Shown here: one piece after another, positions 597 to 59,215 of the stretch
Position numbering within the stretch: position 1 is the stretch's first letter
How the letters are laid out: every line of letters starts with the position of its first letter
IMG/VR virus record: IMGVR_UViG_3300035182_002586
Span: 464,958-528,957 of that record
DNA: 64,000 nucleotides
Direction: 5' to 3' (one strand)
Position numbers and translations under genes: made by a program
The notes under the pieces: model-generated
Databases searched by the model: none
Told to the model about the DNA's origin: nothing
Seen by the model: the letters and a program-made list of their open reading frames with translations, nothing else

Positions 597-625
597 GATG
601 GATCAGCACCCCCTCGCACGGTAGT
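597..625 (+). promoter_or_regulatory. Class I bipartite promoter-like motif GATGGATC(G)-N16/17-GTAG (first of about 20 plus-strand copies)
   Basis: Copies start at 597, 1680(var), 3299, 5181, 12837, 14832, 15175, 17416, 18669, 21014, 25283, 25765, 26812, 28233, 28925, 29454(var), 53660, 54498, 55741, 56344; GTAG (GTAC/GTAA/GTTA variants) begins 24-25 nt after the first G; usually followed by an RBS and ATG. Confidence 0.85.
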
Positions 626-631
626 AGGAGC

Positions 632-1279
632 ATGGCCCGCTACCTCCCCAAGAAGACCGGCGCACACACCTACGACAACAACGTCCTCGTCGCGAGCGAG
701 ATCGGCCTCACGGTCAAGGTCTACTCCGAGAGCGTCCAGGTCATGTCGGACATCTTCGAGTACCAGACCTTCGCGGTTTGCTACAACCAGGCGACGGACT
801 CGTTCGAGTCGCGGTACGTGAACTCGGACTACGGCTCCACGACGGCGTACGCCGAGGTCGACGCCGAGCCCGAGCTGATGGTCCGCTACGCGGCGTGGCA
901 GGTCGAGCAGGCGGCGGAGAACGCCGGCTTCCACCACTCGCGCGAGCTGGACGAAGCGCGGAACGAGCTGCGTCACGTCAAGTACGGCCGCAACGTCAAG
1001 GTTGTCCGTGGCCGCAAGGTCCCGGTGGGCACGACCGGTCGCGTGTTCTGGACCGGCGACAGCAAGTACGGCGCCCGCGTGGGCATCGAGCTGGCCTCCG
1101 GCGAACGCGTGTTCACGGCGACCCACAACGTCGAGGTCGAGGTCGACCCGGCCGAGGTCGCGAAGGTCGAGACGGTGTTCGCCAAGAGCGCCGTCCGCCA
1201 GGCGGCCAAGTTCGCCGCCGAGCGTGCCGCTGCGGTGGCGGCTGCCGAAGCGAAATACGCGGCCGCCCTGGCCGCGTGA
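632..1279 (+). CDS. Hypothetical phage protein with SH3/KOW-like C-terminal segment (VKVVRGRKVPVGTTGRVFW)
   Basis: 215-aa ORF, RBS GGAG, directly after a class I motif, strong C-ending codon bias. Confidence 0.75.
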   Translation: MARYLPKKTGAHTYDNNVLVASEIGLTVKVYSESVQVMSDIFEYQTFAVCYNQATDSFESRYVNSDYGSTTAYAEVDAEPELMVRYAAWQVEQAAENAGFHHSRELDEARNELRHVKYGRNVKVVRGRKVPVGTTGRVFWTGDSKYGARVGIELASGERVFTATHNVEVEVDPAEVAKVETVFAKSAVRQAAKFAAERAAAVAAAEAKYAAALAA

Positions 1280-1305
1280 CCCCAACGAGACGAAAAGAGG
1301 CACCC

Positions 1306-1662
1306 GTGGGAATCATCGCAGACATCTACCGAAGTGGCATGGGCGACTGCTCCAACGGGGGCCTCTCGTCGAAGCACCAGAAGGTCTTGATCGTGAACGC
1401 CGAAGGGCCATTCGATCCGACCCCGACGTGCCCGGCCGTCCTGCTCCGCAAGGGGCCGATCAACACCATCCACGCGGTCCCCGCCAAGCTCGACGTGTAC
1501 GGCAAGTGGGTCCCCGAAGACGAGACGTTCAGCTTCGGGGGCACCTACGTCGCGTGCTGCGACAGCCGCTTCGGCGCCGCGGTCCGCCGGGTCGGCGGGC
1601 AGGACATCTACGGCGCGATCGCGTTCCACGACCGTCCCTGGTCCGACCTTGGGCCGGGCTGA
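1306..1662 (+). CDS. Conserved-looking phage hypothetical protein (GDCSNGGLSS...FGGTY...DSRF...FHDR)
   Basis: GTG start at 1306 after GAGG; motif pattern recalled from phage/plasmid hypotheticals. Confidence 0.65.
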   Translation: MGIIADIYRSGMGDCSNGGLSSKHQKVLIVNAEGPFDPTPTCPAVLLRKGPINTIHAVPAKLDVYGKWVPEDETFSFGGTYVACCDSRFGAAVRRVGGQDIYGAIAFHDRPWSDLGPG

Positions 1663-1751
1663 GAGGCCGCCCGATTCCCGATGGGTCACCCCGGAGGGCG
1701 CGTTGTAGTCCCGAACGCGCTCCCAACCCCAACCCTCAGGAGTGTGCCCTC

Positions 1752-1958
1752 ATGGCTCGTTTCGACCTCAAAGAGATCCTGGACATCTGCGTCACCAAGC
1801 ACGGCTGCCGTATCGAGTACTATGGATCACACGTCCGCGTGCTGCCGCCCGACCCGAAGATGGGCATGGTCGGGATCTCGCAGCACCCGAGCGATCACCG
1901 GGCGATCCGGAACTTCATCGCGCAGCTCCGGCGCGCGGGCATCGACGTGAAGGTGTAA
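1752..1958 (+). CDS. Putative HicA-like small protein
   Basis: 68 aa: GSH-V-x-V-x-PP...HPSDHRAIRNFIAQLRRAG resembles the HicA dsRBD-like fold; RBS AGGAG. Confidence 0.45.
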   Translation: MARFDLKEILDICVTKHGCRIEYYGSHVRVLPPDPKMGMVGISQHPSDHRAIRNFIAQLRRAGIDVKV

Positions 1959-1967
1959 GAGGATCCC

Positions 1968-3115: not shown

Positions 3116-3333
3116 CCGACGCCATGAAGCGTGAAATCGTGGAGTACACCCTGGCCTTCTCGAAGGGCCTCATCGAAGACGACCAGTCGTGCCCCGAGGT
3201 CTGCAAGGCCGTCGACGACAAGGCCGTCACGTGGGGCGAGCTGGAAGAGTACGTGGAGAAGTGCAAGGAGGCCCTCCTCAAGAATCTCCCCTGACCCGGA
3301 TGGATCGTCGCCCCCTCGCACGGTAGTGGAGTC

Positions 3334-3570
3334 ATGGCCCTCGTCGTCCACGTCACCAAGTCGAAGTCGGTTGCCGTTGCCTCGTTCGCTGAGGCGGCCA
3401 AGCTCGTGGTCGCGCAGTGGGGCTCCAAGAGCTACCACGCGATGTACCGCGACCCCAAGGCGGGCATCATCGAGCAGGACGGCGTGCCCTACGCGCACGT
3501 CTCCTACAACGGCCGCGTGTGGGCGACCCCGAACCGCCTCGCGAACAACGCCCCCGAGATCGCGATCTGA
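3334..3570 (+). CDS. Hypothetical protein (SYNGRVW motif)
   Basis: Follows the class I motif at 3299; RBS GGAG. Confidence 0.7.
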   Translation: MALVVHVTKSKSVAVASFAEAAKLVVAQWGSKSYHAMYRDPKAGIIEQDGVPYAHVSYNGRVWATPNRLANNAPEIAI

Positions 3571-3592
3571 TGTCCCTAGTGTCGTAAGCACG

Positions 3593-5171: not shown

Positions 5172-5215
5172 ACTTTCCCCGATGGATCGATCCCGGGTCG
5201 CGTTGTAGAGGGTAC

Positions 5216-5875
5216 ATGGCCCTCATTCACACCATCCAGGTCGTCGACGAGAAGCGCAACCACTCAACCGTCAGCTCGACCCGCAAGAGCGAGACGCGCC
5301 GCTACCTGGCGTGCATCGTCGCGACGACGACCGAGGCGAGCCTCAAGATCGACGCCGGCAAGAAGGCGGCCGTCGAGGCCGAGCTGGTGACCGCCAAGGC
5401 CCGGCTGGCCGAGCTGACGGCCAAGTTCGGGATGACCCCGGAAGAGGCCGAGGCCAAGCACGAGGTCGAGAGCGACCGTTGGTACAACCGTGAAGACGGG
5501 ATCTTCGAGACGGGCCAACGCATCCGTCTGGCGAAGAGTGGGAGCACGTACGGCCACGTCCACAACCTGGACAGCATCGTCAAGGCCGACCTCCTCGCGC
5601 GCGGCTTCGTTGACCCCTATGACAAGAGCGGGACGTACGGCATCTGCGACGTGTACTCCACCGTCCGGCGTTGCGAAGCCACCCTCAAGGGCTGGTTCAA
5701 GCTCACCCTTGGCTCGGAAGGCGTCATCTCGTGGCACGGGACGACGGACCTGGCGCAGAAGGCGATGGGCAGCCTCGACTACATCCGCGAGCGGGGCGAC
5801 ACGCTGGCCATCCGTACGGACATCACCATCACCGAGACCAAGAAGCGCGCCAAGAAGAACGAAGCGGCGGAGTGA
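5216..5875 (+). CDS. Hypothetical protein
   Basis: ATG after the class I motif at 5181; phage-type codon bias. Confidence 0.7.
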   Translation: MALIHTIQVVDEKRNHSTVSSTRKSETRRYLACIVATTTEASLKIDAGKKAAVEAELVTAKARLAELTAKFGMTPEEAEAKHEVESDRWYNREDGIFETGQRIRLAKSGSTYGHVHNLDSIVKADLLARGFVDPYDKSGTYGICDVYSTVRRCEATLKGWFKLTLGSEGVISWHGTTDLAQKAMGSLDYIRERGDTLAIRTDITITETKKRAKKNEAAE

Positions 5876-6259: not shown

Positions 6260-8540
6260 TGCCCAAGCCGAAGAAGCCGAGCCGCAAGGACCTCCACAAG
6301 GCCGCGCAGAAGCTCCTCTTCGCGCTCGCGATCTACCCGAACTACCGCGTCGACAGCCGGGGCCCGAGGGGGTGCCTCCTCGACGCGCTCGATGTTCTCG
6401 ACCCCAAGGCAGCGGCTAAGCTCCGAGACGGACAAGACGCCCACGACCTGCTCGATGAGGAAGGCTGACCATGCACGTCTGCAAGGAAGAGACGAAGGAA
6501 GTCGTGCTCCCGGTCCTTGGCCGCTGCACCGTGGCCGAGGTCAAGAACGAACCCGGCCACTACCTGTGGCTGGACCTCATGGGTTGGCACGACTGCACGC
6601 GGGGCGAAGACGCCATCATCCGGAGCCAGAAGTCGTGAACCAGCGCGATGTCGTGTACCCCGGCCACCCGATCACCGTGGCCCTCATCATCACGCAGGTG
6701 TTCCCCAACTTCGAGGGGGCCAACTACAACGCGCTCGGTTCCAGCGCCATTCCCGGTGCGGGCGGCAACGTCCACCAGGCGCTCGACCTCCTCCGGGACG
6801 CGAAAGACGGCAAACCCCTCGACGAGGTGTTCGCGGAAGCCGACAAGGCTTGGGCCGAGTGTGATGCACAGGCGAAGGGAGGCTACGCCGGCAACGAGGA
6901 GCACCGCAACCACTTCGTCGAACGCTGGATGGAAGGTCAGGAGCAGGCGGACAAGGTGAAGGACGAGCTGCGCGCCCGCCTCACCCCCTGGCTACTCGCT
7001 GTCCCGGGCCGCTAGGCGGAGCGCCTCTTCACGCGCGCCACGCTTGGCAGCGCGCTTCATCCGCTTCTCGACCGCCCGATCCGCCTTGGTCTTCGGGTTG
7101 CTGGAAGTCCCGTGCGGCCGCCCATCGATGTAGGCTTGCACGGTCCCGGATCCGTAGACCTCACGTCCGAGACGCTTTTCCATCGTCGCCATGACTCACC
7201 TCAGAGAGGCCAGCTCTTCGAGCGTCGTGATCGGCCGCGCACTCAGGACGACCGCTCGACTCCAGCCCATGGAACGAAACTCGCTCTGCCCCGGCGTTCC
7301 CGCCACGGGGATCTCGAACATCCCCCACGAGGGGTCCCCGCCGTCCGCGTGCGCTACGAACGAGAGGTCCGCCGTCACCACGAAGTGCGTCGGCTGCCGG
7401 ATCCAAGGGCGGTCCGAGTCCACGTAGCGGCCGGCAGCGTACGCCGCAGCGTAGGCACCCGTCAGATGTGGGACGAGCAGCGCCGCCGACTGCGGCGTGT
7501 GCGTCACCAGGAAGACCTTTGCCTGCTTCCCCTTCGGCCAGCCGATGGGCACGTACGTGTACCCCGTGACTGCCGGAAACCCCGCCCACTCACCCTTGAT
7601 CAGCATCTTGGCCATACTGCCCGACTGTAACACAGGATCATCGGGGGTTGTCGAGGGTAGGACACGATGGGCTGCCCTGCGAACCGCCTCCTCCGACACC
7701 TCGTGCCCCTCGACCTGGAGCGACTGTCGAACGCTCCGTATCAGGGCGTCGCTGACCAGAACACCAGGCGGGGCCCGGCGCCGGGGACGCGCCAGAAGCT
7801 CGCTCAGCTTCGTGTCCGGGGTGACCTTCACAACGAGGTTGTGCCCGTCCACCCACAGCCGGGACACCCGATCCGCCGCTGCGGTGGGTAGGACGTGAGC
7901 ACGACGCCCCCGCTGATGTCGTACAACTCCGTCTTGCAGTGGTCGCAAGCGAAGCCACAGGGGCTTGCACCCCCTCCAACGATCACCGCATGGATCCGGT
8001 CCCGCATCTGCTCCGTAACCCCCTCGCGGAGCGGGATCTGCTGGCTCTGGATCGCGAGGACCCTATCTGCACGCTCCTGCGCCTTCCGGGCACGCGACTC
8101 TTCTCGCCACGCCTTCTCTTCGTTGAGCGTCCTCATGCGCTCCTAGTACACCACGGTCCGGTGTAAGCCCCTCACATGGGTGCGACCCGGACCGTTCGCG
8201 TTGACGCGCTTCTCGTCGAGTACATGCAGGCCACCGCCTCGGTCAGAAAACTCCGAGATCGCACGAAGGTTCTGCAACGCCAGATCCTCTTGAAGGCGGG
8301 CTGGAAGGTCCACGCTCCGGGTTCCACGGGATGGCTGAAAGGGATCGAGCGGCACGTCGCCTCGAACCCCAAGTCCAAGGTGACCGCCGGGTTCTACCAA
8401 CGCTACTACGCGAACAAGGAGGTCTGGGTCGATCCCGTCATGAAGGATCTCCTCTTCATGGTGTCCTACGCCTGGACCCGGCATTTCGGGCGAATCAGCC
8501 GCTCCTGCGATCTCATCGCCAACGGTGTAGAGGCACGAGC

Positions 8541-12173: not shown

Positions 12174-12860
12174 ATGGACCCGCGAGACATCCGAGCCTGG
12201 CTCCGAGACCCCGAGACCAACGGGGGCGACCTCTGGCTCAAAGCCAACGGAGAGGAAGCGATCCGTCTCCTGCTTGGGCGTCTCGACGCCTTCGAGGATC
12301 GAGACGAGACGATCGCGCGCGACTCGGCGGAGCGGAGGGCACGCATGGACGCCTTCATCGCGAAGCTCGAAGAGAACGCGCCGCCCCCTCCGACCCCGGA
12401 GGAGATGGAGAAGACTGCGGAGAGCTTCGCCGAAATGTTCAAGCCGTGCGAGCACTGCGGCAAGTCCGGCATGTCCTGCATCGAGGACGAAAGCTGCCAC
12501 TGCTGCTACGGCTGCATCCGCCTGCGGGACATCCTGCACGCCGTCCTGACCAACCCGAAGAGCGAGACCCTCGCGGCTGCGCGGGCAGCCTACGAGGAGA
12601 GTGACCCCCGCCAGTGGATCGGGTCCGAGATCGCCTACCGGCTCAAGGACCTTGGCGTGGAGGTGGTCCGGAGCCCGTTCCCCGACTTCATCCAGGGCAG
12701 CAAGGGGGACAAGACCTTCGCGGCGCGAGCGGACGGGATCAAGGTCTTCTACTGGATCAACCACGGGGAGGAGAAGCAGGCGGAGTACCTGGTCGACCTG
12801 ATCGACACTCTCGTGGCCGAATTCCAAACCCCTCTGGATGGATCGGCCCCGCCCCCCTGA
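12174..12860 (+). CDS. Hypothetical protein with central Cys cluster
   Basis: ATG 10 nt after GGTGTA (12158); CEHC...CxxxxxCxCCxxC. Confidence 0.6.
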   Translation: MDPRDIRAWLRDPETNGGDLWLKANGEEAIRLLLGRLDAFEDRDETIARDSAERRARMDAFIAKLEENAPPPPTPEEMEKTAESFAEMFKPCEHCGKSGMSCIEDESCHCCYGCIRLRDILHAVLTNPKSETLAAARAAYEESDPRQWIGSEIAYRLKDLGVEVVRSPFPDFIQGSKGDKTFAARADGIKVFYWINHGEEKQAEYLVDLIDTLVAEFQTPLDGSAPPP

Positions 12861-13656
12861 GGTAGTAGGGGCATGAGCAGCACGCCCCTCCCCGAAGTCG
12901 GCCAGAAGATCGCCTACTGCATCGGCAGCGATCGCTACGCGGTCACGATCAAGGACGTTCAGCGCGGGGGCCAGACGGTCATCGTCGAGCTGCGTCAGGG
13001 CCGCAACGTCCACGAGTACGAGTGCACCAAGGGCCGCGACGGCGTGTACCGGGAGAAGGGTCACCGTATCGGGATGCTCGACTTCACGCGCAGCGACGGC
13101 CACCTGTCGCGGGAGTTCTGAGATGGGGGCCAAGCGCGAGAAGCTGAAAGAAGACCTGCGGGAGGCCATCCGCCTCATCCGCATGTTCGTCGACGGGGAG
13201 TACTGCACCTTCCACTACGACCGCAAGGACGGCGAGACGTGCAAGGAAGCACAGTCGCGTAAGCAGGGTGTCCCCATGCCCGGGTGCGACCAATGCCAGG
13301 CCCGCGACTTCCTCAAGAAAATGAAGGACTTCCGATGAAGACGACGATCACCGAGTGGTACGCGCGGGGTGGTGGCATCGCGAAGTCTGGCCCCCACGCG
13401 TCGCAGGCGATGGCTGCGGCCGCGATCATGGGCGTCAACGGCTTCCCCGTGGAAGACGCCTTCATCTGGCCCGTCGAGGTCGAGCGCGAGGTGCTGAGCA
13501 CCTCCGACGAGTACGTCGTGTGGGCCGCCCTCTCCGCCATGGTCGACGACGTGCACTGCGCGCAGGACCAGCTCACCGAAGAGCAGTGGGCGCACGCCAG
13601 CAACCTCTTCCAGCGCCTCACCAAGAAGCTGAACGCCAAGTCGGAGTCGAAGTAGC

Positions 13657-14478: not shown

Positions 14479-14479
14479 G

Positions 14480-14833: not shown

Positions 14834-14866
14834 TGGATCGAGCCATCACCGCCTTGTAGTAGACTC

Positions 14867-15166: not shown

Positions 15167-15210
15167 CGATTCCGGATGGATCGGACTCTCCCTCGCGAGG
15201 TAGTAGGGTC

Positions 15211-15567: not shown

Positions 15568-15574
15568 GGATCCC

Positions 15575-44802: not shown

Positions 44803-46184
44803 GTCCGGCGCCCCTACACCGGGTTCCCCGCCAGATCGGGGGTTCTGGGACGGCCCGCGAGTATTTCTACGGACCGGGGTTAATCAGCACAGCCGCCGAG
44901 CACACCCGTACCCTACGGTGTGGGTCGCCTACTGGCCGAGCTTTGGTGGCGGGCAGCCTCGGTCGACGTTCCACCACACGTACGCATCGGCTGAGAACGA
45001 TCGCGGGGACGGGTGGTTGACCGAGCCCGCCGTGGTGCTCCCCTGCTACGGCCCAGAGCAAGGGCCGGAAGAACTCGCAGCCCGAGTACGGATCCGGGGA
45101 CAGACCGGGGCCTGGCCTCTCCACCCTCTTAGACCCGAGGAGCGCGAGGTGTCGCAGGCTCCCACCGAGGCCGCGGTGGATCCCGTTGCGGAGGAGATCG
45201 TATCCCAGGCGTTGACGTGGGACGGCACATCGATGGTTCCCGGGGGCGACCTGGAGTGGCAGCAGATCGTGCCCTTCCTTCGAGGCTGGGCGCTGATGGT
45301 TCCAGACGTGCGCGTAGAGAGCGCATCGCGGAGCCGGGTCGTAAACGAGCCGGAGAACCCGGGTGTGGTCTCGATCGTCTTGGTCTCCACCGTGGGGCCG
45401 GGCCGGGCCACCGTAACCGTAGGCCCAGAACCAGACATGGGGACCACGATCTCTTCCACGCCTCACATGAGTTTGTCCGAGATCACGGCACACGGGCACT
45501 TCATGCAGAGGGTGGGCGAGGCGGGCGAGCGCCTCCAGACCTTCCTCCGAGCACACCTCGTCGGTGTAGCGGAGGGCCTGAGATGAACATCGTGCTCCAC
45601 TACACGCCGAGCGACATCATCACCGGGGCGCTGCTTGTCTTCGTCGTGGTGGGGTTCATCATCCTCCGCTGGAGGGCCGGATGACGACGGGACCACGGTG
45701 GGACAGCCGACGTGAGAAGCTTCGGGAGCTACTCCAGGAGGGGCCGGAAGCGCGAAGGGTGCTGGCCGACTCCTGGCTCTCTAGCTCCGCGTGGGCGTCG
45801 GGGCCGGCATTCGAGTGGCAGCTCGAAGTGGGGCGTGCCCTGCTCGACTGGCCGGACGTGGATCGAGACGCAGTGCGGGCCCGACTCGACGAGTTGGTGG
45901 CGCAGCGCCGGACCTAACACTTCGAGGCGACGCCTTTCACATCCGGGTGCGAGACGCGGAGGGCGCTGAGCATCTGGTAGATGTCCGTGTGGTCGGGCAG
46001 GCGCTTGACGTTGCCGAGCGCCCAAGCCGTATCGACCAGGAACGTCTCCCCCCGTGAAGTCTTGACGGTGCTGGTCCCGGGCTGCGGGGCGGGCTCGACC
46101 GCGAAGGTCGTCTCGATCCCCGCGTACTCCGCGACGACGTTCAGCTCTTCCGCGAGGGCTTCGGGGCTCTTGGGCATGACCCCA

Positions 46185-46214
46185 CTACCTCGTGTGGGGG
46201 GCGGGCGATCCATT
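46185..46214 (-). promoter_or_regulatory. Class I motif on the minus strand (first of 8 minus copies)
   Basis: (c)gatccat on plus at 46206, 47593, 48323, 49316, 50038, 50425, 50964, 58951; ctac (GTAG) 25 nt away in most; each precedes a minus-strand ATG. Confidence 0.8.
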
Positions 46215-47234: not shown

Positions 47235-47729
47235 GAGAGCGTCCTACACCATCTTGTCGGCAGGCGGGCCGGATGTGACAGGGGCCGAGACAAAAAGCAG
47301 ACAGCCCGTGTCCCGACCAAGGGGCACAGGCCAAGGGGCACAGGCTGTCTGCCGCGCTTTGGAGGGCTACAGGAGCGGACCGTAGAGGACGTCACGCCGC
47401 ACGTCCGAGATGGTGCGGCAGGGGGCGCTCGTGTGGAAGTACGGGTTGCCGTCCACCCACGGGTTCTCGGGGACGACGACGGGGCTGACCTCGTAGCCCT
47501 TCTCCAAGAGGGCGGCAGCCATCTTGCGGAGCGTCTCGACGTCGGGGCTTCGGTACGTGGTCATGGGGGGCACTACAACGGGAGGGGCGGGCCGATCCAT
47601 CCGAAGATTGTGGGCTGAGGACTGGACTCTCGGGGACAGTTAGCCCACCGTTTCCCGTTTCAGGGCTGCCGTTGTAGGGAATCACGTGCTTCCGCTACGG
47701 AAGGTCCTGCCAGTCGGGTCGTATCGTGG

Positions 47730-48062: not shown

Positions 48063-51000
48063 GGGGTTCAACCCTGCTTGCCGAACGAGTGCGCGACCTC
48101 GTGGTAGTGGGCCGCGCTCATGAGGTGGTACATGATGGCCGAGACGCGGCGCTCGACCGGGAACTGGTCGCGGCCCTGCTCGCCGCTCAGCCAGCGACGC
48201 GCGCACTTGAGGCACGAGCGGGTCAGCTTGAGCGCGTGGGCGCGGGTCATCTCGATGGTGGTCTCGGTCTCGATGGCGGGGTGCAGGCTGTCCATGTCCC
48301 CACTACAGCGGGAGGGGCGGGACGATCCATCCAGAAAAGGTGACGCCGCTAGAGGAGAACCGTCATCCCTGCGAGGAACTGAAGACGTTCCTCCCGGGTG
48401 CGGAACCGGTACATGCCCCCACGGAACGAGAGGCTCAGGTCCTCTGGGAGCGCCTTGTCTTCGTCGTAGAGCCAGTCGAGCAGCTTGTTGAGGGCGCTGG
48501 GAGTGAACCCCTCAGCCTCGTAGACCGGGTGCGGCTCCTGCTGCACGAGGTTGATGTTCATGGTCAGCCTCCGAACTCCTTGATAACGAACTCCGTCTCC
48601 TCGACGAGCCCCATGAGGTTGCGGGCCCGAGCCTGCTCGCAGCGCGTCCGGAGCATCGGCAAGTCGGCGGGGCCGAGCGGGCGAAGAACCTCGCTGAGCG
48701 AGGCCGAGTAGCCCACGGCGGGCTCCTGCACGCCGTCGGAGGGCGCACGGAAGGCGAGGCCCGGACCGGGAGCCTTCCCGGGAGGCGGGGTGTACGGCCC
48801 CTGGTAGCGCAGGATTTTCCCACCCACGAGCATGTAGATCGTGCCGACGGTCAGCGGGCTGTCCATTGCTTCTCCTACACCGCCACCGGGCGGGGAATAC
48901 CAGCGCCAATCACGTAGTAGAGGACCCGCGCGCCAGCGACATCCCTCCAGTAGTATCGGCAAAGCCCTTGCCTGCCAAGGAAGCGGAGTCGCATCACTTG
49001 GGGGTTCTTGGTCATGGGGATCAGAGGGCGAAGAGCGTTTTCTCGACGGCGGTGGCGTTGCGCACGGCGAACCGGATCTCGTAGCCGTCCGTGCGGGCGT
49101 CGCAGTCGAAGTACAACTTCCAGGTCGCCTTGAGCGGGCGGACGAACGCGTCGGCCGGGATGGCGTCGAGGATCGCCTTGACCTTCTTCTCCAGGCGGCC
49201 ACCGGCGACCGAACCGGTCACGCGCAGCTCGCAGGAACCCGTGAGACTGTTGACGAAGAAGCGGCGGGGCTTGGGGGTCTTCGAGGTGGCCATGACTCCA
49301 CTACCTCGCGTGGGGCGATCCATCCGGCCTCGGACGAATTCCTCAGACCTCGATCACGACTTCCTTGTAGGGCTTGCCCACGCCAGGGACGACGAAGATG
49401 TCGACACGGCGCGCCGCCCCGTCCTCGTGAAGGTCCTCCTCCAGCTCGTCCTCGGCCGCGATGAGGACGTAGCCGCCCGTCGCCGCGTAGGAGATCGCCG
49501 GGTCTCGGAACGCCTTGAGGCTCTCCCAAATGCTGGCCGCCACCCTGTCGGGGTCGCCGCCGTAGGTGGGGTTGTTCTTCGCCAGGAAGGTGCACGCACC
49601 GTCGAAGTCCGACTGGCTGAACAGGATCTTCATGAGGTTCTCTCGTACACCGCGGGGGTCGGGGTGGTCACAGGTCGTCCTTCCGGGCGATGAACTCGCG
49701 GTTGTCGGGGTCTTGGTTCGCCCAAGCGACGCCCCAAGCGATGGCCTGGTCGCGCCCTTCACGCGTCTCCGTCACGAAGAGGACCTGGTGGGCATCGAGG
49801 CCCGAACTCGCCCGGACGGACCAACCCTTGAAGGTCTTCGTGAGGATGGCGCCGCGTCGGCCGCGTCGGTGCTGGTCAACCTGCACCTTGATCAGACCGG
49901 GAGAGTCGTACGTGTCGGCATAGCGCCCGGGGGTACAGAGACGACGCGTCTCCTCGTCCCACTTCGAGGGGTTGCCGGCGAGGAGCGTGAAGTGCGCGGT
50001 GTTGACCATGACCCTACTACAGCGGGACCCCCAAGGGGATCCATCCGCGAACTCTTCTACCTGAGCGTGACAATACACATACCTCCTGTAGGGCTGAGGG
50101 TTGACGGAGAGAGGGTCACACGAGGCCGAAGTTCGCCAGCACGCACTCCTGCTCGACGATCGCCTTGAGCAGGCCGTCCTTCTTCGCAGCGAGGAGCTTG
50201 TACCCCTGCGAGCCGACCGGGAAGTTCGAGTAGATCGGGTCGGCGTCGAGGTCACGGAGCTGCATGACGAGCGCGGTGCGCTCCTCGATGGCCGTGAAGA
50301 CCTTGCCGGCCTCTTCGCTGTCCAGCTCGATGAAGCGGGCTTCCAGCTCGGCTTCGACGAAGTTGTAGAGCGCGGGGTTCGAGGACTTGAGGGCGGCGGC
50401 CTTGGACATGCGCGTGGGTGGGGACGATCCATCCGGAATCGTCACCCGGTGATCCGGCTGAAGTCGAGCTTGTCGTGCGGATCCATCAGCCGACCGACCG
50501 TAGCGGGACGACCTCGGGCTTGGGGAGCATGACGGTATCACCCAAGGCGAGAACAGCATCCTCCCAAGGACCGCGCTTGAACGCCACGATGTTCGGGGGG
50601 AACTTGGCGCTTCCCCCGGCAACGGCGTTGAACCACCGCAGGCCGAAGACCTTGAGGCCGTTCTCCCCCCACAGGTCGATAAGGTACCAGTAAGGGGTGT
50701 GCGAACGGAGAATCATCTTCCCGCTGGAGTCGACGAAGCCGTCGCACGGCTTCTGCTTCGGCGCCACCGTGAACGGCGTCTCCAAGGACACGTGGAAAGG
50801 GCCGACATCGAACGTCCGGCGAGACGGGGCCGTTTCGTTCACGTGCCATGCGGCGGTGTCGGGGTGGTTGGCGAGGAGACGCAGCAGAGCGTCCCGAAGG
50901 GCCAGGGCGCGTTCGAGACGGGTCGGCTTCTTCATACCCACCACTACCGCGGAAGGGTCACCTCGATCCATCACCGAGGGGCCGACCGCGAAGGACCGAG

Positions 51001-53564: not shown

Positions 53565-54533
53565 GGCTCAAATTCGCCCCTCTGGGCCTGTTTCCCATGC
53601 GGACCGGGCCGGATCGCGTCCGCGATGGCTTCCTGTGGGTCCGAAGGGCCGCAATTCCCGATGGATCGGCGCCCTCCCCACGCTGTAGTGAGGGGCATGA
53701 GCACGGATCCCAACTGCGAACGCTACCACCGAAGCCCGGGCGTGCTGTCCCGCCGCTTCCGCTGTGGCGGCTGCAAGCGTCTGGTGTGCTCCAAGTGCTG
53801 CACGCGCGGCGGGCGGGGACAGGGGCAAGGGTCCACGCGATGGGCCGAGTGCTTCGACTGCCAGGCGACGCGTGAAGCGAAGATGTCCAACCGGAAGCAC
53901 TGAGGCACCACCATGACTCGTAAGCCCACGCGCAGGCGTACCCCCAAGGCAGTCCCCGCTCCGGTCACCCTCCCGAAGGGCTCCCTCTCCGTGGACGGTT
54001 ACTCCTACACGAGCGTGAAGGGGCGCGTCTTCACCCTCGGCCCCATCGAGCATGAGGAGCGGTGGCCGGGCGACCCCCTGTGGTCGGATACCATCCAAGT
54101 CCTGCTCGACGGCGAGCCTGCCGGCAAGCTGTTCCAGAGCGAGTCCTACGGCAAGACCGCGAACGACGAGCCCCGCTGGAACGCCAGCCTGAACGGCCTG
54201 CGCATGAAGCTCCTCAAGTGGGGCGAGAGCACGCCGTACGGCATCGGATTCGATGTCGCCGCCTTCGACACCATGGAGGAATGCCTCCACGCTTGGAGCC
54301 GGAGCGCAGACGGCCTCCTCGACTGGCGTGAGGCGAATCCGCTGGTGTAGTCCCTCTTGTGGGAAGGGCGAAAGTGATGTCCTACTCGTACGACTTGAGG
54401 TAGGCCATCTGGACGGGGGAGAACTTCTCTGCGGCAAGGGCGAGAAGGTCATCGAGGGGCTGTTCGGGCTCAAGCGTCGCTAATTCGATCGCGACCGGAT
54501 GGATCGGCGCCACCCTCACGCTGTAGGGGGGAC

Positions 54534-55031
54534 ATGACCACCTCGACGACCTCCACCGAGTCCATGACCGTCCAGGCCGCGCGCGAGCTGTGCTACGAGC
54601 TGGTCCGCACGCTCCTCACCGACCGCGGCCGCCAGACCATCAAGGCGCGCGTCGAGACGACCGAAGAAGTCGCCGCTGTCTTCGAGAACGGCCGCTATGT
54701 CCAGCGCCGCGTCGAGTCGGGCCGCATCATCTTCGAGGGTGGCCTCACGGGCTCGCACGCACTGGAGCTGAGCGTCTCGTCCGAAGCCCGCGTGCGCACC
54801 CACTTCGAGGGCTACTGCGAGAACAACGGCTGCTTCAAGCCGAGCGTTGGCCAGAAGGTCGACTTCCCCTCCGGCTCGGCCCGCTCCGGCTGGCGCACCG
54901 GTCGCGTCGTCAAGGTCGGCACCAAGCGCGCCGTGGTGGCGTTCACCTACAAGCACGGCGGCGAGAGCACGGCGACCGTGAGCTTCGACAAGCTCCGCAT
55001 GTACGTTCGCAAGATGGGTCCGGTGTCGTGA
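54534..55031 (+). CDS. Hypothetical protein with C-terminal SH3/KOW-like domain
   Basis: After the class I motif at 54498; VGQKV...GRVVKVGTKRAVV. Confidence 0.7.
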   Translation: MTTSTTSTESMTVQAARELCYELVRTLLTDRGRQTIKARVETTEEVAAVFENGRYVQRRVESGRIIFEGGLTGSHALELSVSSEARVRTHFEGYCENNGCFKPSVGQKVDFPSGSARSGWRTGRVVKVGTKRAVVAFTYKHGGESTATVSFDKLRMYVRKMGPVS

Positions 55032-55776
55032 TGACCACCCTGCTCTACAGCGATGCCGTCCGCTACCTCAAGACGGCCGTACGCGTCCAGGACGCTGCCC
55101 TCACCAAGCTGGCCCTCGACTACTTCAAGGCCAACAACGTCACGAGCCGCGAAGCCTACCGCATCGCCCTCGCGGGCGACCCCTCCCTCACCTGGGATGA
55201 GTGGACCGATCTTCTCGCGCGCGCTGGAGTCCAGTTGCCGTGAGAGACGCCTGGTGAACCATGATGGTCTCCGCCATCATGGTTCACCAGGGCCTCCAGT
55301 CCGCCAGCCGCAGCACATGCGGGAAAGTTGATCAAAAGATGGAAATTCCCCTCCTCGTCGTCCGGCTCCACTCGACCACACTCCCGGCTGGCCCCGCGCG
55401 CGTCATCGCCCACGTGGCGAACGTCAAAGAGTTCCTCGCCATGCGGACCGACCGGTGGGGAGAGGGGTACGACCCCGCTCTTCGCCTGTGGCAGGGCAAC
55501 GTCCCGGTCGGCGAGATGGCCTGGCTCCCGTGACCCGACACGTTGCCTCTCACGAAGTCTTCGAGGGGGCACTCGTCTTCTGGATGCACGTCCCACGCGG
55601 CGGGTATGGGTTCACCCTCCCCGTGGAAGCCAAGGTCCTGACCCTCAACCCGGCCGGCACGAGGGCCAAGATCGAGGTCACGACGAAAACGGGCCGGAAA
55701 GTCCAGCGGATCGTGGACACCGAGAATCTTCGCTGGCGCTGATGGATCGGGCCCACCCCCACGCGGTAGTGGAGAC

Positions 55777-56259
55777 ATGACCACCACCGAGAGCTTCGTC
55801 GAAGTCGGCAAGAACAAGATCACCTCGTGGGAGACCACGGTGACGGTCGAGCGCACCCCGGCGACCATCGACGACCTCGACTGGAAGTCGCGCTGGTTCA
55901 TGGACGTCGGCAGCCAGATCGCCAAGGTCGAGCGCTGCAAGATCACCCGCACCTTCGAGAAGTCGAGCAACCCGTACGTCGAGACGGGCTTCGAGGTGAC
56001 CTTCCTCTGCGGCGCCAAGGGCTGGATCACGGTCTACCGCGACTACTCCGAGCTGAACGCCCTCGTGGTCGGCACCAAGGGCTACCTCCACGGCCTCGCC
56101 GTGTGGCGCAAGCACCGGAACATCGTCGGCCACTGCGTCCCCTGGTTCACGGCGCAGATGGGCGACCGCAAGCGCCTGAACGCCAACACCGCCCCCCGGT
56201 GCTGCGCCGCCGAGCTGTACGCCCGCGCCGCCGGCAAGCCGTGGGGCACCACGGTCTGA
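55777..56259 (+). CDS. Hypothetical protein
   Basis: After the class I motif at 55741; RBS GGAG. Confidence 0.7.
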   Translation: MTTTESFVEVGKNKITSWETTVTVERTPATIDDLDWKSRWFMDVGSQIAKVERCKITRTFEKSSNPYVETGFEVTFLCGAKGWITVYRDYSELNALVVGTKGYLHGLAVWRKHRNIVGHCVPWFTAQMGDRKRLNANTAPRCCAAELYARAAGKPWGTTV

Positions 56260-56379
56260 AAGGACCTCGGAACAATACGTCCGTGGGACCGAAGAAGACC
56301 TGCCCGGCGACGTGCAGATGCGCATGTACCGCGCCCCCCCACGGATGGATCGGCGCCCACCCCGCACGGTAGTATCCCC

Positions 56380-56709
56380 ATGCCGAACCTGATCGTCACC
56401 AACGACAAGGGCCGCAGCTTCACCGTCCGCATCGTCCGGAAGGGCGACCGCTACGGGCTCAACGACTGCCTCACCCACAACAAGGCCGAACCCCTCGTCG
56501 AGTTCTACGACCTCACCTACACGAAGAACTTCGGCCCCCTCGGGCAGTTCGTCTCCCGCTACTACCTCGATACCATCGCCGACATCCCCCTCGGCCAAGG
56601 CATCGACCTCATGGGCTACGAGCCCGTGTGGAAGATCGATGGCCCCACCATGCAGACCGTCATCGAGCACGCCCGGCGCACCCGCCGCGAGCTTGGGGCC
56701 GTCCGGTGA
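56380..56709 (+). CDS. Conserved-looking phage protein (GDRYG..CL...PLVEFYD...GQFVSRYY)
   Basis: After the class I motif at 56344. Confidence 0.7.
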   Translation: MPNLIVTNDKGRSFTVRIVRKGDRYGLNDCLTHNKAEPLVEFYDLTYTKNFGPLGQFVSRYYLDTIADIPLGQGIDLMGYEPVWKIDGPTMQTVIEHARRTRRELGAVR

Positions 56710-57180
56710 AGCGCAAGCCCACCTGGAAGCAGGACACGCCACGGATGCAGACCGTCGCCTGCGTCATGAGCGCCCAAGGCGACCTCCTGAACCTCCTCGC
56801 CGGCCACAGCCCCAACCCGAAGCTCGCCATGGAGCGAGCCCTCGGCTTCCTCACCGAAGCACAGGAGATCCTCCGGCACTTCGTCCCCGAAGGGGAGTGG
56901 CCGAAGGATGGCTAGCAGACGCAGGGAGGCTCCTTGTAGCGTCCAGGGTCGGACCGGACGAGTCCCTCCGCGTCCGCGGTGGAAACCAGCGCCACAGCGC
57001 CCGCCTAGCAGACCGTAGGCGGAGTCGGGCCGGGAGCGAAGAGGGGTCGTTGAAGCACCACCTGACCCACAACCTTGGCCTTCGCCCCCTCACGCTCCGG
57101 CACCTCGACCACATCGGTCACCTGCTCGACGCGACCATCCGTAAGCAGCCGAACATCTGTACGCCCACCCGGTACACCGT

Positions 57181-58074
57181 TCAGCACTTCAGGTGCTCCT
57201 CCGCCTCCGCCATCCGGTACGGCCGCCCGCACCGCCGGCAGTGCCAGAACCACTCGCCCGGCTGGAGCCTCCGCCGGTGCGCCCGCTCCAGTTGCCCCTC
57301 CCGGAAGCCCTTCATGTAGTCCGGCGACGTCCCGCCCGGCGTCAGCCCGGCCAGACCGTCCCGCTCCCCCTGGAGGAACCGCAGCCCGGCCACGGCCTCC
57401 GCCTGGTGCGGGTCCCGGTACATCCCGAGACGCTCCGCCGTCAGCTCGTCCACGACCCTCGCCAGACCGGATAAAGTGGTGTTTTGACCCCCGGGCGAAG
57501 CCCCCTGGTCCCCATCGGGATCGCGGGGATCCTCGGGGTTTCCGGGATCCGCAGCCGGAAGGGCCGCAGCGGTCGGCTCGGCCCAATCCGAGTTCCTCCA
57601 GCAGTGAACCTCACGGGTGGCACCACACCCACACGAGCATCCGGGGGGCGGCTCCCCGAAGGGCCCGACCCGAGAAGCTCGCGCCCGCTCGAAGGCCAGG
57701 TCCCGTGCCCGCTCTTCGTCCGAAGGGAGGATACCCGCCTCGCGCATCTCGGCCTCGACGGCCGCCTCGGTCTCCGGGTCCGCCTCGAAGTCCGCGAGGA
57801 GCCGCTCCCGGGCCATCTGCTGTTCGGGGGTGACCCACCCCTCGGGCGATGGGATCCCTTCCCCTAGCGCCGCTCCGAGGGCGAGACGGGCCAGCTTGAG
57901 GGCACCCTCCGCCCGCCGATGGTAGATGGTGTGCTGCTGGTCGCTCCCCTCCCGCGTCACGCCGTAGGTCGCGACCCCGCGCTCGTCCTCGGTCACGTGG
58001 ACCACGCGCACGGTCTCGACGACACGAGGCGCCTCCCCGCTCGCGGGTAGCACCTCGATCCGGATCCTCAGCAT
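57181..58074 (-). CDS. Hypothetical protein
   Basis: 297 aa; GGTGTA upstream (about 58085). Confidence 0.55.
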   Translation of the reverse strand: MLRIRIEVLPASGEAPRVVETVRVVHVTEDERGVATYGVTREGSDQQHTIYHRRAEGALKLARLALGAALGEGIPSPEGWVTPEQQMARERLLADFEADPETEAAVEAEMREAGILPSDEERARDLAFERARASRVGPFGEPPPGCSCGCGATREVHCWRNSDWAEPTAAALPAADPGNPEDPRDPDGDQGASPGGQNTTLSGLARVVDELTAERLGMYRDPHQAEAVAGLRFLQGERDGLAGLTPGGTSPDYMKGFREGQLERAHRRRLQPGEWFWHCRRCGRPYRMAEAEEHLKC

Positions 58075-58550
58075 GGGGACGGTCTACACCGGGTCGGGCC
58101 AGACCGTGCGGGGCTCCCCGGGCCGGACCACCTCGCACCGGGCCGGGGCAGGAGGAAGGTCCGGAACTCCCGGGTCATGTCCACCCGCTCGATGCCCACA
58201 TCCAGGCCGAGCGAATCCGCCTGCGCGTGCGCCCGCTCCCGAGCCGCTCGGTACTTCCGGGTCCCCTCCGGCGTCGTGGTCCAGTCCATGGCCGTTCTAC
58301 CTTCCATCCGCCAGCTCCCCCGGCGGTGGCTTCTATGTCCAGGTCGGGGCGAAATCCCTCGCCCGAAATTCTCAGAACCCGAGGAGCCGGCTGAGCGCCA
58401 GGCACCAGTGCCAGAGCGACACGGGCGAGTCCAGCCCCCGGACCACCCTGCGGGTCACCCGCAGGGTCACCCGCAGGGTCACCACGGCCGCAGTCCGGGG
58501 CTCGATGCCCCGGTCGTACGGCACGTCCACCGTCCAGCCCCCGGCGTCCA

Positions 58551-58922
58551 TCAGCCGAAGATCCCACCGTCGTAGAAGGTGCCGTCCTCGTCCGCCTTCT
58601 TCTCGGCGGCGATCTCTTCGGCTGCGCCATCGGCGTACGCCTCCGAGCCGTACATCGGCCACGTCGGCGTCCAGTGGGCCGACCCTTCCGGACGCTCCCC
58701 ACGGGCCAGGCGACGACGCACGGCCGGAACGCAACGGGCCGCCGCCTCCGCCGAACCGAAGCTGCGCTGCGACAGCCAACGCTCCCCGTTCGGGGCCTCG
58801 ACCATCACGAAGTACACCTCGACCTCGCGACGCTCCCCATCCTCCGGATGACGCGGACCCCACGCCAGTCGGGAAGTCGGGCCCACGTGCCACTCACCAG
58901 CCGAAGTCGTCAGGGTCGCCAT
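58551..58922 (-). CDS. Hypothetical protein (MATLTTSAGEW...)
   Basis: ATG at 58922 after the minus class I motif at 58951. Confidence 0.65.
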   Translation of the reverse strand: MATLTTSAGEWHVGPTSRLAWGPRHPEDGERREVEVYFVMVEAPNGERWLSQRSFGSAEAAARCVPAVRRRLARGERPEGSAHWTPTWPMYGSEAYADGAAEEIAAEKKADEDGTFYDGGIFG

Positions 58923-59215
58923 GTCCCTCCTACAGCGCGGGCCGGGTCGAGATCCATCCACGACCGGACGCTTCCGGGGCCGGCGTACGGGCGGGTGCGA
59001 TAACGCAATGCGTCGGGGATCGTGTCCGTCGGGACCGGATCCCCGACCGGAAAATCGACAGGGGCGGACCGGCTGGATTTCCGGGCTGGCATGGTCATTG
59101 ACCGTGCCATTACCGTTCGTGGCCGGATCCGCCAACGGTCGTGATCGGGTTTGGCACTTGGTGATCCATACCCCATATAAGCGACGCGTGCGTCATCGGG
59201 AACCCCCTAGCCCCG

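What the first reader, a model, noticed from the sequence alone, without database searches (positions are those of the whole stretch)
597..58958. About 28 copies of a fixed-spacing bipartite motif GATGGATC(G)-N16/17-GTAG heading small gene cassettes
Seen: 20 plus-strand and 8 minus-strand copies (coordinates in features). GTAG starts 24-25 nt after the first G in nearly all, and most are followed by an RBS and ATG about 10 nt later, always co-oriented with the downstream gene. The geometry is that of a -35/-10 promoter, but the sequence is not the sigma70 TTGACA/TATAAT consensus. Established: large phages cluster early host-takeover genes behind repeated strong promoters (e.g. SPO1). Inference: this is a dedicated phage or alternative-sigma regulon defining the early/anti-defence gene set. 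The genes behind it are prime anti-defence candidates.
Basis: partly seen in the sequence, partly recalled or inferred. Interest (0 to 1): 0.75.

Follow-up and report, generated by a model that had tools for sequence, protein, structure and literature searches.

The report
Repeated leaderless-gene promoter in a huge phage
The repeated GATGGATC…GTAG motif is real and is best read as a phage-specific two-part promoter that starts transcription at the ATG of small unknown genes in a 529-kb phage, and the same repeats seem to be the points where gene cassettes are swapped between related phages.

Summary
The window is the last 64 kb of a 528,957-bp phage genome. It holds 26 exact GATGGATC boxes against 2.5 expected. 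The genome holds 78, and 68 of them are followed 16/17 nt later by GTA(G). All 46 start codons are ATG. This is the geometry of a -35/-10 promoter making leaderless mRNAs.

It is one of two promoter classes. The second, CGGTGTA-N9-11-CATG, has no -35 box and heads about 110 genes. It is enriched in roughly 20 related huge phages. The -35 box varies by lineage: TGGATC here, TTGATC, TTGATT and TTGAAC in relatives. Genes behind the motif are ORFans in a hypervariable ~120-kb region.

Contigs of a related population break and rejoin exactly at these promoters, as at T4-type PeSL cassettes.

No RNA data exist, so start sites, timing ("early") and any anti-defence role remain untested. The factor that reads the motif is not identified.

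The parts
597..634 (+). Class I promoter: box 597-604, GTAG 621-624, ATG 632. Heads ORF 632-1279 (215 aa).
3299..3336 (+). Class I promoter. Heads ORF 3334-3570 (78 aa).
5181..5218 (+). Class I promoter. Heads ORF 5216-5875 (219 aa).
12837..12875 (+). Class I promoter. Heads a five-gene array, 12873-14833, whose last gene is the sigma-region-4-only protein.
14480..14833 (+). 117-aa protein consisting of sigma70 region 4 only, with recognition helix SRERVRQIEE. Its last codons overlap the next class I box. It is a candidate transcription modifier, not shown to read the motif.
   Evidence: no co-occurrence with class I promoters
14832..14869 (+). Class I promoter. Heads ORF 14867-15166 (99 aa). 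Its homologue in relative G001 lies behind a TTGAAC-type class I promoter.
15175..15213 (+). Class I promoter. Heads ORF 15211-15567 (118 aa).
17416..17453 (+). Class I promoter with GTAC in place of GTAG. Heads ORF 17451-17642 (63 aa).
18669..18707 (+). Class I promoter. Heads ORF 18705-18941 (78 aa).
21014..21052 (+). Class I promoter. Heads ORF 21050-21265 (71 aa).
25283..25321 (+). Class I promoter. Heads ORF 25319-25507 (62 aa).
25765..25802 (+). Class I promoter. Heads ORF 25800-26036 (78 aa). It is a breakpoint of two joints in contigs of run X4.
26812..26877 (+). Class I promoter with GTAA and a 38-nt leader carrying GAGG 6 nt before the ATG at 26875. The box is one end of a 1432-bp skip in run X4.
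28233..28270 (+). Class I promoter. Heads ORF 28268-28606 (112 aa). It is the other end of the 1432-bp skip in X4.
28925..28984 (+). Class I promoter followed by a leader with AGGAGG and a probable GTG start near 28982.
46175..46214 (-). One-mismatch copy (AATGGATC, spacer 18). Heads ORF 45914-46177 (87 aa).
47562..47601 (-). Class I promoter with ATG at +12. Heads ORF 47367-47564 (65 aa).
48293..48331 (-). Class I promoter. Heads ORF 48068-48295 (75 aa).
49291..49324 (-). Variant with a 12-nt spacer; GTAG-N7-ATG is kept. Heads ORF 49021-49293. Probably a deletion scar.
50007..50045 (-). Class I promoter. Heads ORF 49668-50009 (113 aa).
50407..50433 (-). Box followed after 16 nt directly by the ATG of ORF 50116-50409. 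The GTAG block is missing (scar).
50480..50487 (-). Box alone, overlapping the TGA stop of ORF 50486-50935. No -10 block.
50933..50972 (-). Class I promoter with ATG at +12. Heads ORF 50486-50935 (149 aa).
53660..53699 (+). Class I promoter with ATG at +12. Heads ORF 53697-53903 (68 aa).
54498..54536 (+). Class I promoter. Heads ORF 54534-55031 (165 aa).
55741..55779 (+). Class I promoter. Heads ORF 55777-56259 (160 aa).
56344..56382 (+). Class I promoter. Heads ORF 56380-56709 (109 aa).
58920..58958 (-). Class I promoter. Heads ORF 58551-58922 (123 aa).
8152..8178 (+). Example of the second promoter class, one of about 37 gene starts in the window: GGTGTA, 9-11 nt, then ATG of ORF 8176-8544. 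It is paired back to back with a - strand copy that heads ORF 7828-8136.

Best explanation
The motif is a bipartite promoter of the sigma70-family type. It drives leaderless mRNAs in a 529-kb phage.

Anatomy (shown). The parts are a -35 hexamer TGGATC inside the invariant 8-mer GATGGATC, a 15/16-bp C-rich spacer of variable sequence, a -10-like hexamer (T/G)GTAG(A/T), then 6 nt ending in C, then ATG.

Mechanism (inferred). RNA polymerase starts at the A of the ATG, so the transcript begins with the start codon and needs no Shine-Dalgarno site.

Context (shown).
- This is the -35-containing class ('class I', about 57 genes) of a two-class system.
- Class II (CGGTGTA-N9-11-CATG, about 110 leaderless starts plus about 30 further upstream of a start) shares the invariant GTA core but has no -35 box.
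- Class II is conserved across a clade of huge phages. The -35 hexamer differs between lineages: TGGATC, TTGATC, TTGATT, TTGAAC.

Reader (inferred). The host RNA polymerase core is used, because no phage polymerase was detected. Specificity for the odd -10 probably comes from a phage-encoded factor conserved in the clade. The best candidate is the conserved 215-aa protein with two sigma-region-4-like helix-turn-helix units, but this is not shown.

Cargo and plasticity. Class I promoters sit in front of fast-evolving ORFans packed into a ~120-kb hypervariable region. Because the promoter is repeated almost identically, it also acts as a site of homologous exchange, so cassettes are deleted, inserted and reordered between related phages. 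This is shown provisionally from metagenome contigs.
For: Non-randomness:
- 26 boxes in the window against 2.5 expected; the full pattern 21 against 0.00.
- 68 of 78 genomic boxes carry GTA at N16/17. Only about 13 one-mismatch copies exist, against 7 in a control.

Phasing to gene starts:
- In 46 of 68 sites, the ATG of a gene called independently by codon statistics lies 11 (40 sites) or 12 (6 sites) nt after the G of GTA.
- C precedes the ATG in 48 of 66 sites.

Leaderless signature:
- SD-like words in class I lie 1-4 nt from the ATG, against 5-10 nt in other genes.
- Start codons are 46/46 ATG, against 352/496 in other genes.
- Of the 14 sites with the start 13-62 nt after the GTA, 9 have an SD-like word in the last 18 nt, 8 of them 4-11 nt from the start.

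Compactness:
- The upstream stop codon is within 20 nt of the box in 27 of 46 sites and overlaps it (TGATGGATC) in 11.
- No canonical sigma70 promoters, and no excess of terminators, in window 12000-31000.

Homologous elements in relatives:
- G002 has GTTGATTC-N15-TGTAGT-N6-ATG. G001 has GTTGAAC-N17-TGTAYT-N6-CATG. G016 has 50 copies of TTGATC-N16-TGTAGG-N6-CATG.
- The few class I genes that have homologues are often class I in relatives too, e.g. G0 190229-191113 = G001 272468 = G002 318883.
- A soil relative (74% nt identity) has 10 more GATGGATC promoters of identical geometry.

Class II:
- About 110 sites in G0.
- 141 against 8 and 54 against 3 in G001 and G002. Enriched in 17-18 of 20 further huge-phage records. 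At background in five bacterial or archaeal genomes.

Not duplication: class I genes are not paralogues of one another.

Exchange at promoters: X4 contigs join 26820 to 28253 (box of one promoter to the spacer of another, skipping 1432 bp). They also join 25507 to 25779 and 28922 to 25779, each with GGATGGATC in between.
Against: - There are no transcript data. No RNA run holds the phage, so the start site at the ATG, the promoter activity and the timing are all inferred.
- The -10 hexamer in the register that puts +1 on the ATG (KGTAGW) has G where sigma70-type promoters have the near-invariant A(-11).
- The two classes differ by 2-3 nt in the GTA-to-ATG distance (11 against 12-15). No single register fits canonical geometry for both.
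- No complete sigma factor (no region 2) and no RNA polymerase was found in the phage.
- The recognition helices of the conserved two-HTH protein are identical in three phages with different -35 boxes.
- The sigma4-only protein does not co-occur with class I promoters across 23 genomes.
- The joints come from short Logan contigs aligned at 80% likeness, with flanks of 27-57 nt. The tool warns that such joints can arise from other organisms or repeats.
Confidence: 0.75

Rival explanations
1. Activator-dependent promoter, working like T4 middle promoters with a MotA box. In this reading GATGGATC is not read by sigma region 4. A phage-encoded DNA-binding protein binds it and recruits a remodelled host polymerase, and only the GTA block is contacted by sigma.
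For: - All 8 bp of the box are nearly invariant (16 bits) and almost no degenerate copies exist. This is typical of a dedicated factor rather than a housekeeping -35.
- The box differs between related phages, although sigma region 4 is nearly universal.
- The phage carries several sigma4-like or HTH proteins.
Against: - The lineage variants (TTGATC, TTGATT, TTGAAC, TGGATC) all keep T-x-G-A at the canonical -35 position and spacing. That points to a sigma4-type reader.
- No MotA or AsiA homologue was found, although that search had no positive control.
- No candidate activator co-varies with the box.
Confidence: 0.2
2. An RNA-level, start-associated element, comparable to the start-associated sequences of Cluster K mycobacteriophages. 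Transcription would begin further upstream, and the conserved GTAG...GG...CATG block, possibly with the box, would act in the 5' UTR to promote translation initiation.
For: - The distance to the start codon is fixed and a G-rich run lies next to the ATG.
- Arrays of co-oriented genes without terminators could be read through from upstream.
Against: - Two blocks are separated by a spacer of 16-17 nt with variable sequence. This matches promoter geometry, not a folded or base-pairing RNA element.
- The upstream block in relatives is a near-canonical -35.
- Sites further from the ATG usually carry an SD-like word between motif and start (9 of 14).
- Class II copies occur as back-to-back pairs serving divergent genes with no room for an upstream promoter.
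- Start codons are 100% ATG.
Confidence: 0.08
3. The primary role is as a recombination site that bounds mobile gene cassettes, in the manner of integron attC sites or dedicated site-specific recombination. Promoter-like features would be secondary.
For: - Joints in a related population fall exactly at the motifs.
- Scar-like copies occur at 49324, 50433 and 50487.
- A soil relative has the same motif with unrelated cargo.
Against: - The motif always points the same way as the downstream gene and is phased to its ATG to the nucleotide. A recombination site does not need this.
- The class without a long repeat (class II) has the same relation to starts.
- No recombinase was linked to the motif.
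- Exchange between short repeated promoters by general recombination explains the joints, as proposed for PeSLs (PMC2839356).
Confidence: 0.05

Closest known systems
PeSLs (promoter-early stem-loops) of T4-type phages: mobile regulatory cassettes (Arbiol et al. 2010, PMC2839356; Comeau et al. 2014, PMC4122927)
   Same: - A short, highly conserved promoter is repeated many times in hyperplastic regions full of small ORFans.
- Indels, replacements and reordering between close relatives have their breakpoints in the repeated motif.
- The same regulatory motif carries different cargo in related phages.
   Different: - There is no stem-loop or terminator half. Intergenic space is essentially only the promoter.
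- The -10 is non-canonical and the mRNAs are apparently leaderless.
- The host is not E. coli-like and the genome is three times larger.
- Mini-circles were not tested.
Middle/late promoters of Thermus phages P23-45 and phiYS40: -10/-35 class against extended -10 class, with many leaderless transcripts (P23-45 classes: PMC7403470; the leaderless point is from memory of Berdygulova et al. 2011 and Sevostyanova et al. 2007, which were not readable here)
   Same: - There are two promoter classes, one with a -35 and one with only an extended -10-like block.
- The start codon lies at the predicted transcription start.
- The phage relies on host polymerase plus small phage factors aimed at sigma region 4.
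   Different: - The sequences differ: GTA core and GGTG upstream element here, against TG-n-TATAAT.
- No gp39 or gp76 homologues were tested.
- The temporal classes here are unknown.
Phage sigma-dependent promoter sets, e.g. SPO1 gp28 middle promoters (from memory)
   Same: Many near-identical bipartite promoters with a phage-specific consensus at sigma70-like spacing, clustered before small host-takeover genes.
   Different: No complete phage sigma factor was found here. Only sigma4-like proteins are present. The -35 remains close to the canonical TTGACA family.
ECF (group 4) sigma promoters, GGAAC/TGAAC-N16-17-CGT(A/C) (from memory; compare PMC7776599)
   Same: A short -10 centred on GT, with -35 variants GGATC and TGAAC at ECF-like spacing. 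JGI annotators called the conserved two-HTH protein 'sigma24 family'.
   Different: No sigma2 domain is encoded in the phage. The model of the conserved protein matches only sigma4 domains. The AAC hallmark is absent from the G0 box.

Membership tests
sigma70-family bipartite promoter | Two conserved blocks separated by a 16-18 bp spacer of variable sequence, pointing the same way as the downstream gene | tested here: met
   Spacer from box end to GTA is 17 nt in 48 sites and 16 nt in 18. That gives 15/16 bp or 17/18 bp between hexamers, depending on the register. All copies point the same way as their gene.
sigma70-family bipartite promoter | -35 hexamer related to TTGACA | tested here: inconclusive
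   TGGATC matches 3 of 6 positions. The equivalent hexamers in relatives are TTGATC, TTGATT and TTGAAC, matching 4-5 of 6.
sigma70-family bipartite promoter | -10 hexamer with A at -11 and T at -7 (TATAAT-like) | tested here: not met
   With +1 on the ATG, the hexamer is (T/G)GTAG(A/T), with G at -11. The tool's sigma70 scan found 0 sites in window 12000-31000.
sigma70-family bipartite promoter | Transcription start 6-8 nt downstream of the -10 | not testable with these tools
   No RNA run holds this phage.
Leaderless-mRNA promoter | Start codon at a fixed short distance from the -10, coinciding with the predicted +1 | tested here: met
   The ATG is 11 nt (40 sites) or 12 nt (6 sites) after the G of GTA in 46 of 68 sites. 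It coincides with independent gene calls.
Leaderless-mRNA promoter | No Shine-Dalgarno site at functional spacing, and preference for AUG | tested here: met
   SD-like words lie 1-4 nt from the ATG, against 5-10 nt in other genes. Start codons are 46/46 ATG against 71% ATG elsewhere.
PeSL-type mobile regulatory cassette | Repeated promoter concentrated in hyperplastic, ORFan-rich regions | tested here: met
   39 of 57 class I genes lie in 417-529 kb plus 0-9 kb. Only 3-6 of 57 have homologues in relatives, against 30-35% of other genes. The 20 scanned proteins gave only weak or uninformative Pfam/PHROG matches.
PeSL-type mobile regulatory cassette | Adjacent stem-loop terminator | tested here: not met
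   Terminator-like sites numbered 8 against 13.1 expected, and none lies beside a motif. The upstream stop codon lies within 20 nt of the box or overlaps it.
PeSL-type mobile regulatory cassette | Indels or rearrangements between close relatives with breakpoints in the motif | tested here: met
   Three joints in X4 contigs fall at promoters 25765, 26812/28233 and 28925. This is provisional: the contigs are short and were aligned at 80% likeness.
Phage-sigma regulon (SPO1 gp28-like) | Phage-encoded sigma factor with regions 2 and 4 | tested here: not met
   PF04542 gave no match. TIGR02937 matched only its region-4 half. The AF2 model matches sigma4 domains only.
T4 MotA/AsiA sigma appropriation | MotA and AsiA homologues | tested here: inconclusive
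   No match to PF09114 or PF09010, but the control genomes gave no signal either.
Phage-RNA-polymerase promoter (T7-, phiKZ- or N4-like) | Phage-encoded RNA polymerase | tested here: not met
   No match to PF00562, PF00623 or PF00940 in G000-G002. Very divergent polymerases could escape these models.

The most novel reading that the evidence does not exclude
A large, widespread clade of 250-660-kb phages carries a conserved two-HTH sigma4-like protein. The proposal is that this clade runs its own promoter grammar on the host polymerase. Its elements would be an invariant GTA-centred -10 that breaks the A(-11) rule, read by a split or minimal sigma-like apparatus, together with genome-wide leaderless translation. 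Subclades would add a private, fast-evolving -35 word. That word would also serve as the recombination handle that shuffles ORFan cassettes, so one 38-bp element would couple expression and gene flux.
Probability: 0.3. Interest if true: 0.8.

Novelty: new variant of a known kind. Interest (0 to 1): 0.6.

Why it matters
- Huge phages are known almost only from metagenomes, and their gene regulation is essentially unmapped. This result gives a sequence-level promoter map of about 170 predicted leaderless starts in this genome. It also gives a motif (CGGTGTA-N9-11-CATG) that marks transcription units across a whole clade. That improves gene-start calling and operon prediction in these genomes.
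- It points to a non-canonical -10 recognition problem, with G at -11, that in vitro transcription can address.
- It nominates two small sigma4-type proteins as polymerase-redirecting factors.
- It suggests that repeated promoters drive cassette turnover in the hypervariable arm, where counter-defence and host-takeover genes would be expected. That expectation is itself untested.

Tried and rejected
1. RNA evidence: no RNA run holds the phage. Shares were 0.09 or less, which is noise.
2. The protein-DNA complex of the sigma4-only protein with the box was not folded by the tool. It is not evidence either way.
3. Sigma4-only protein as reader of the box: rejected as unsupported. Its recognition helix is canonical (RERVRQ) in both G0 and G002 although the boxes differ. 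Such ORFs do not co-occur with class I promoters across 23 genomes.
4. Conserved two-HTH protein as reader of the variable box: rejected. Its recognition helices are identical in G0, G001 and G002. It remains a candidate for the conserved GTA/GGTGTA core.
5. Phage polymerase or complete sigma factor: none found.
6. Gene duplication as the source of the repeats: rejected. There are only two paralogous pairs among class I genes.
7. Link to GATC methylation or restriction: GATC and GGATC occur at the expected frequency, O/E 0.96-1.01.
8. Host promoter: the class II pattern is at background in five candidate genomes, including three Planctomycetota MAGs. The host remains unknown; the best LigA match is 39% to a Planctomycetota MAG.
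9. Megablast against GenBank phages found no match. Rfam found nothing in the window.
10. A protein-anchored scan of metagenome contigs found nothing.
11. Literature searches for the motif, or for leaderless promoters in huge phages, found nothing relevant.
12. A candidate third motif, TTCTTATC, lies before large structural genes. It is not conserved in relatives.

Full report
**What the window is.** The window is the last 64 kb (464958-528957) of a single 528,957-bp IMG/VR virus record. The record has 64% G+C, 54 tRNA genes and a tmRNA clustered at 123-176 kb. It encodes a portal, a large terminase, a weak HK97-type capsid match, an NAD ligase, helicases, a UvsX-like recombinase and a clamp loader. 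It is a huge phage. It has no close relative among GenBank phages. DNA runs from sediment, microbial-mat and groundwater metagenomes hold it or near relatives.

**The observation.**
- GATGGATC occurs 26 times in the window, against 2.5 expected. The full pattern GATGGATC-N15-18-GTAG occurs 21 times, against 0.00 expected.
- With one single-mismatch copy there are 27 boxes. Of these, 23 head an ORF whose ATG lies 11-12 nt after the G of GTA.
- Genome-wide there are 78 boxes, and 68 are followed by GTA after 16 nt (18 sites) or 17 nt (48 sites). One-mismatch versions are barely above a control, so the 8-mer is essentially invariant.
- Aligned on GTA, the conserved downstream block reads yCnCGy-(T/G)GTAG-wrGG-rn-CATG.

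**Relation to genes.**
- I called genes from codon statistics alone: 713 genes covering 87% of the genome.
- In 46 of the 68 sites, the called start is the ATG exactly 11 nt (40 sites) or 12 nt (6 sites) after the G of GTA.
In the other 666 genes, SD-like words peak 5-10 nt upstream.
- All 46 start codons are ATG, against 71% ATG in other genes.
- Of the 14 sites whose start lies 13-62 nt after the GTA, 9 have an SD-like word in the last 18 nt, and 8 of those lie 4-11 nt from the start.
- The upstream gene's stop codon lies within 20 nt of the box in 27 of 46 cases, and overlaps it as TGATGGATC in 11.
- No canonical sigma70 promoters occur in 12000-31000, and terminators are not enriched there.
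- This either/or pattern is the signature of promoters that produce leaderless or leadered mRNAs: ATG at a fixed short distance without an SD, or a longer leader that usually has one.

**A second promoter class.**
- Word enrichment upstream of all genes revealed CGGTGTA(G/C/A). GGTGTA lies 12-15 nt before about 110 gene starts, counted from the G of GTA.
- C precedes the ATG in 66-84% of the G0 sites, across the four spacing classes.
- This 'class II' has no upstream box. It often forms back-to-back pairs (TACACC...GGTGTA) between divergent genes.
- It can also sit further upstream of an SD-led gene. One example is the clamp-loader operon, which contains the sigma-like gene.
- In the window the two classes are interspersed within the same co-oriented arrays.
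- Both classes are scarce in the large structural blocks at 220-280 and 340-400 kb.

**Relatives.**
- The terminase search found two related huge phages: G001 (407 kb, 55% GC) and G002 (363 kb, 63% GC), with 55-56% TerL identity.
- Neither has the GATGGATC motif. Both have class II in great excess: 141 against 8, and 54 against 3.
- They have their own bipartite versions. G002 has GTTGATTC-N15-TGTAGT-N6-ATG. G001 has GTTGAAC-N17-TGTAYT-N6-CATG.
- Across 20 more records of the clade (252-512 kb, 44-65% GC, several with terminal repeats), class II is enriched in 17-18.
- The bipartite class, searched as TKGA-N18/19-KGTA-N8-ATG, occurs only in G000 (31), G001 (12), G002 (9) and G016 (50, as TTGATC-N16-TGTAGG-N6-CATG). 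Controls gave 0-2.
- The -35 hexamers therefore form a series: TTGAAC, TTGATT, TTGATC, TGGATC. All keep T-x-G-A at the canonical place.
- Soil-metagenome contigs hold 10 further GATGGATC promoters of identical geometry. One of these contigs is 74% nt-identical to G0. Another has four cassettes with no homology to G0.
- The class II pattern is at background in five bacterial or archaeal genomes, including Planctomycetota MAGs, which gave the best LigA match at 39%.

**What lies behind the motif.**
- I scanned 20 class I-headed proteins against Pfam, and 10 of them also against PHROGs. None gave an informative function. The matches were a PHROG of unknown function plus a weak HNH-endonuclease hit for 632-1279, DUF6011, and sub-threshold Lcl_C (two paralogues), AAA_21 and RrnaAD.
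- Class I genes are not paralogues of one another.
- Only 3-6 of 57 have a homologue in G001 or G002, against 30-35% of genes without either promoter.
- Where homologues exist, several are also behind the relative's own class I promoter. The class is therefore conserved while the box sequence drifts.
- 39 of the 57 lie in 417-529 kb plus 0-9 kb.
- The genes are thus a fast-turnover accessory set. That fits host-interaction functions, but there is no evidence for 'early' timing or 'anti-defence'.

**Who reads it.**
- No multisubunit or T7-like polymerase was detected, and no sigma region 2.
- A 215-aa protein (genome 71524-72171) has two sigma-region-4-like HTH units. More than 750 homologues at about 60-94% identity (mostly 60-73%) exist, on contigs up to 659 kb. 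An AF2 model (pLDDT 78) matches only sigma4 domains.
- Its recognition helices are identical in G000, G001 and G002. It cannot explain the differing -35 words, but it could read the conserved core.
- The record with the most divergent copy (40% identity) lacks class II.
- Inside the window, ORF 14480-14833 encodes 117 aa. It matches only the C-terminal part of primary-like sigmas, from the region 3.2 linker through region 4, with recognition helix RERVRQ. It is the last gene of a class I-headed array.
- Such sigma4-only ORFs do not co-occur with class I promoters, so a role as the box reader is unsupported. A role as a decoy or competitor for host sigma region 4, or for the beta-flap, is speculation.
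- The register problem remains open. With +1 on the ATG, class I fits -35/16/KGTAGW/6/+1, with G at -11. Class II fits better with TA at -12/-11.

**Cassette exchange.**
- I laid Logan contigs of three related populations on window 24500-29500. Run X4 (groundwater) gave joints exactly at promoters.
- 26820 joins 28253. This links the box of promoter 26812 to the spacer of promoter 28233, skipping 1432 bp (two genes), with a 57-nt flank.
- 25507 joins 25779, skipping 271 bp, with ...GGATGGATC... between the two sides.
- 28922 joins back to 25779, again with GGATGGATC between, which implies a different cassette order.
- Scar-like copies in the window fit the same process: 49324 (12-nt spacer), 50433 (box, 16 nt, then ATG with no -10) and 50487 (box alone).
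- This parallels the PeSL 'mobile regulatory cassettes' of T4-type phages (PMC2839356, PMC4122927), but without the stem-loop.
- Caveat: the contigs are short and were aligned at 80% likeness.

**Verdict.**
- The motif is real and is very probably a promoter for leaderless mRNAs.
- It is one of two classes in a clade-wide, phage-specific promoter system.
The 'RBS' is wrong. The 'unrelated to sigma70' claim is only half right. 'Early' and 'anti-defence' remain open.
- The kind of element is known: repeated phage promoters and PeSL-like cassettes. The consensus, the leaderless design in huge phages and the clade-wide GTA core are new.

Noticed in passing
window 14480-14833 (+): A 117-aa ORF consists only of the C-terminal part of a primary-like sigma factor, from the region 3.2 linker through region 4.1-4.2, with the canonical RERVRQ recognition helix. 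The best PDB matches are RpoS and SigA. Similar sigma4-only ORFs occur in G002, G021, G023, G024 and G025. It may compete with or mimic host sigma region 4.
   Followed up: partly
genome 71524-72171 (-), outside the window (L013:11524-12171): A conserved 215-aa protein has two sigma4-like HTH units. It lies downstream of the clamp loader and of a 5'-3' exonuclease with a NusG-like N-terminus. More than 750 homologues exist on contigs up to 659 kb, so it is a hallmark gene of a large clade of huge phages.
   Followed up: partly
whole genome; window examples 7828-8178, 60352-60401, 24752-25319: A second promoter-like motif, CGGTGTA(G/C/A)-N9-11-CATG, heads about 110 genes and often forms back-to-back palindromic pairs between divergent genes. 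It is enriched in about 20 related huge phages with 44-65% GC.
   Followed up: yes
genome 124922, 126653, 169466, 211471, 226111, 240385, 250980, 353737, 378706, 397066 (all - strand): A third motif, T(T)TCTTATC, lies 20-56 nt upstream of starts. Several of these are the very large structural genes, for example those of 2460 and 1403 aa. It may be a late promoter. It is not conserved in G001 or G002.
   Followed up: partly
genome 123254-176528: An array of 54 tRNA genes, including a putative suppressor tRNA (anticodon tta), plus a tmRNA with tag ANDNGTVITALKAAA.
   Followed up: no
window 49291-50487 (- strand): A cluster of defective promoter copies: one with a 12-nt spacer, one with the box followed directly by ATG, and one box alone overlapping a stop codon. 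They look like recombination scars.
   Followed up: partly
genome 70455-71420 and 341940-342905: Two ORFs look like homing-endonuclease or HNH-type proteins with repeats. The second has a LAGLIDADG-like motif and terminal HTHs. One lies next to the sigma-like gene and the other next to the capsid gene.
   Followed up: no
genome 412731-417467: A 1307-aa methyltransferase (DUF6094) fused to an SNF2 helicase is preceded by a 270-aa gene behind a class I promoter. Both genes and the promoter class are conserved in G002.
   Followed up: no
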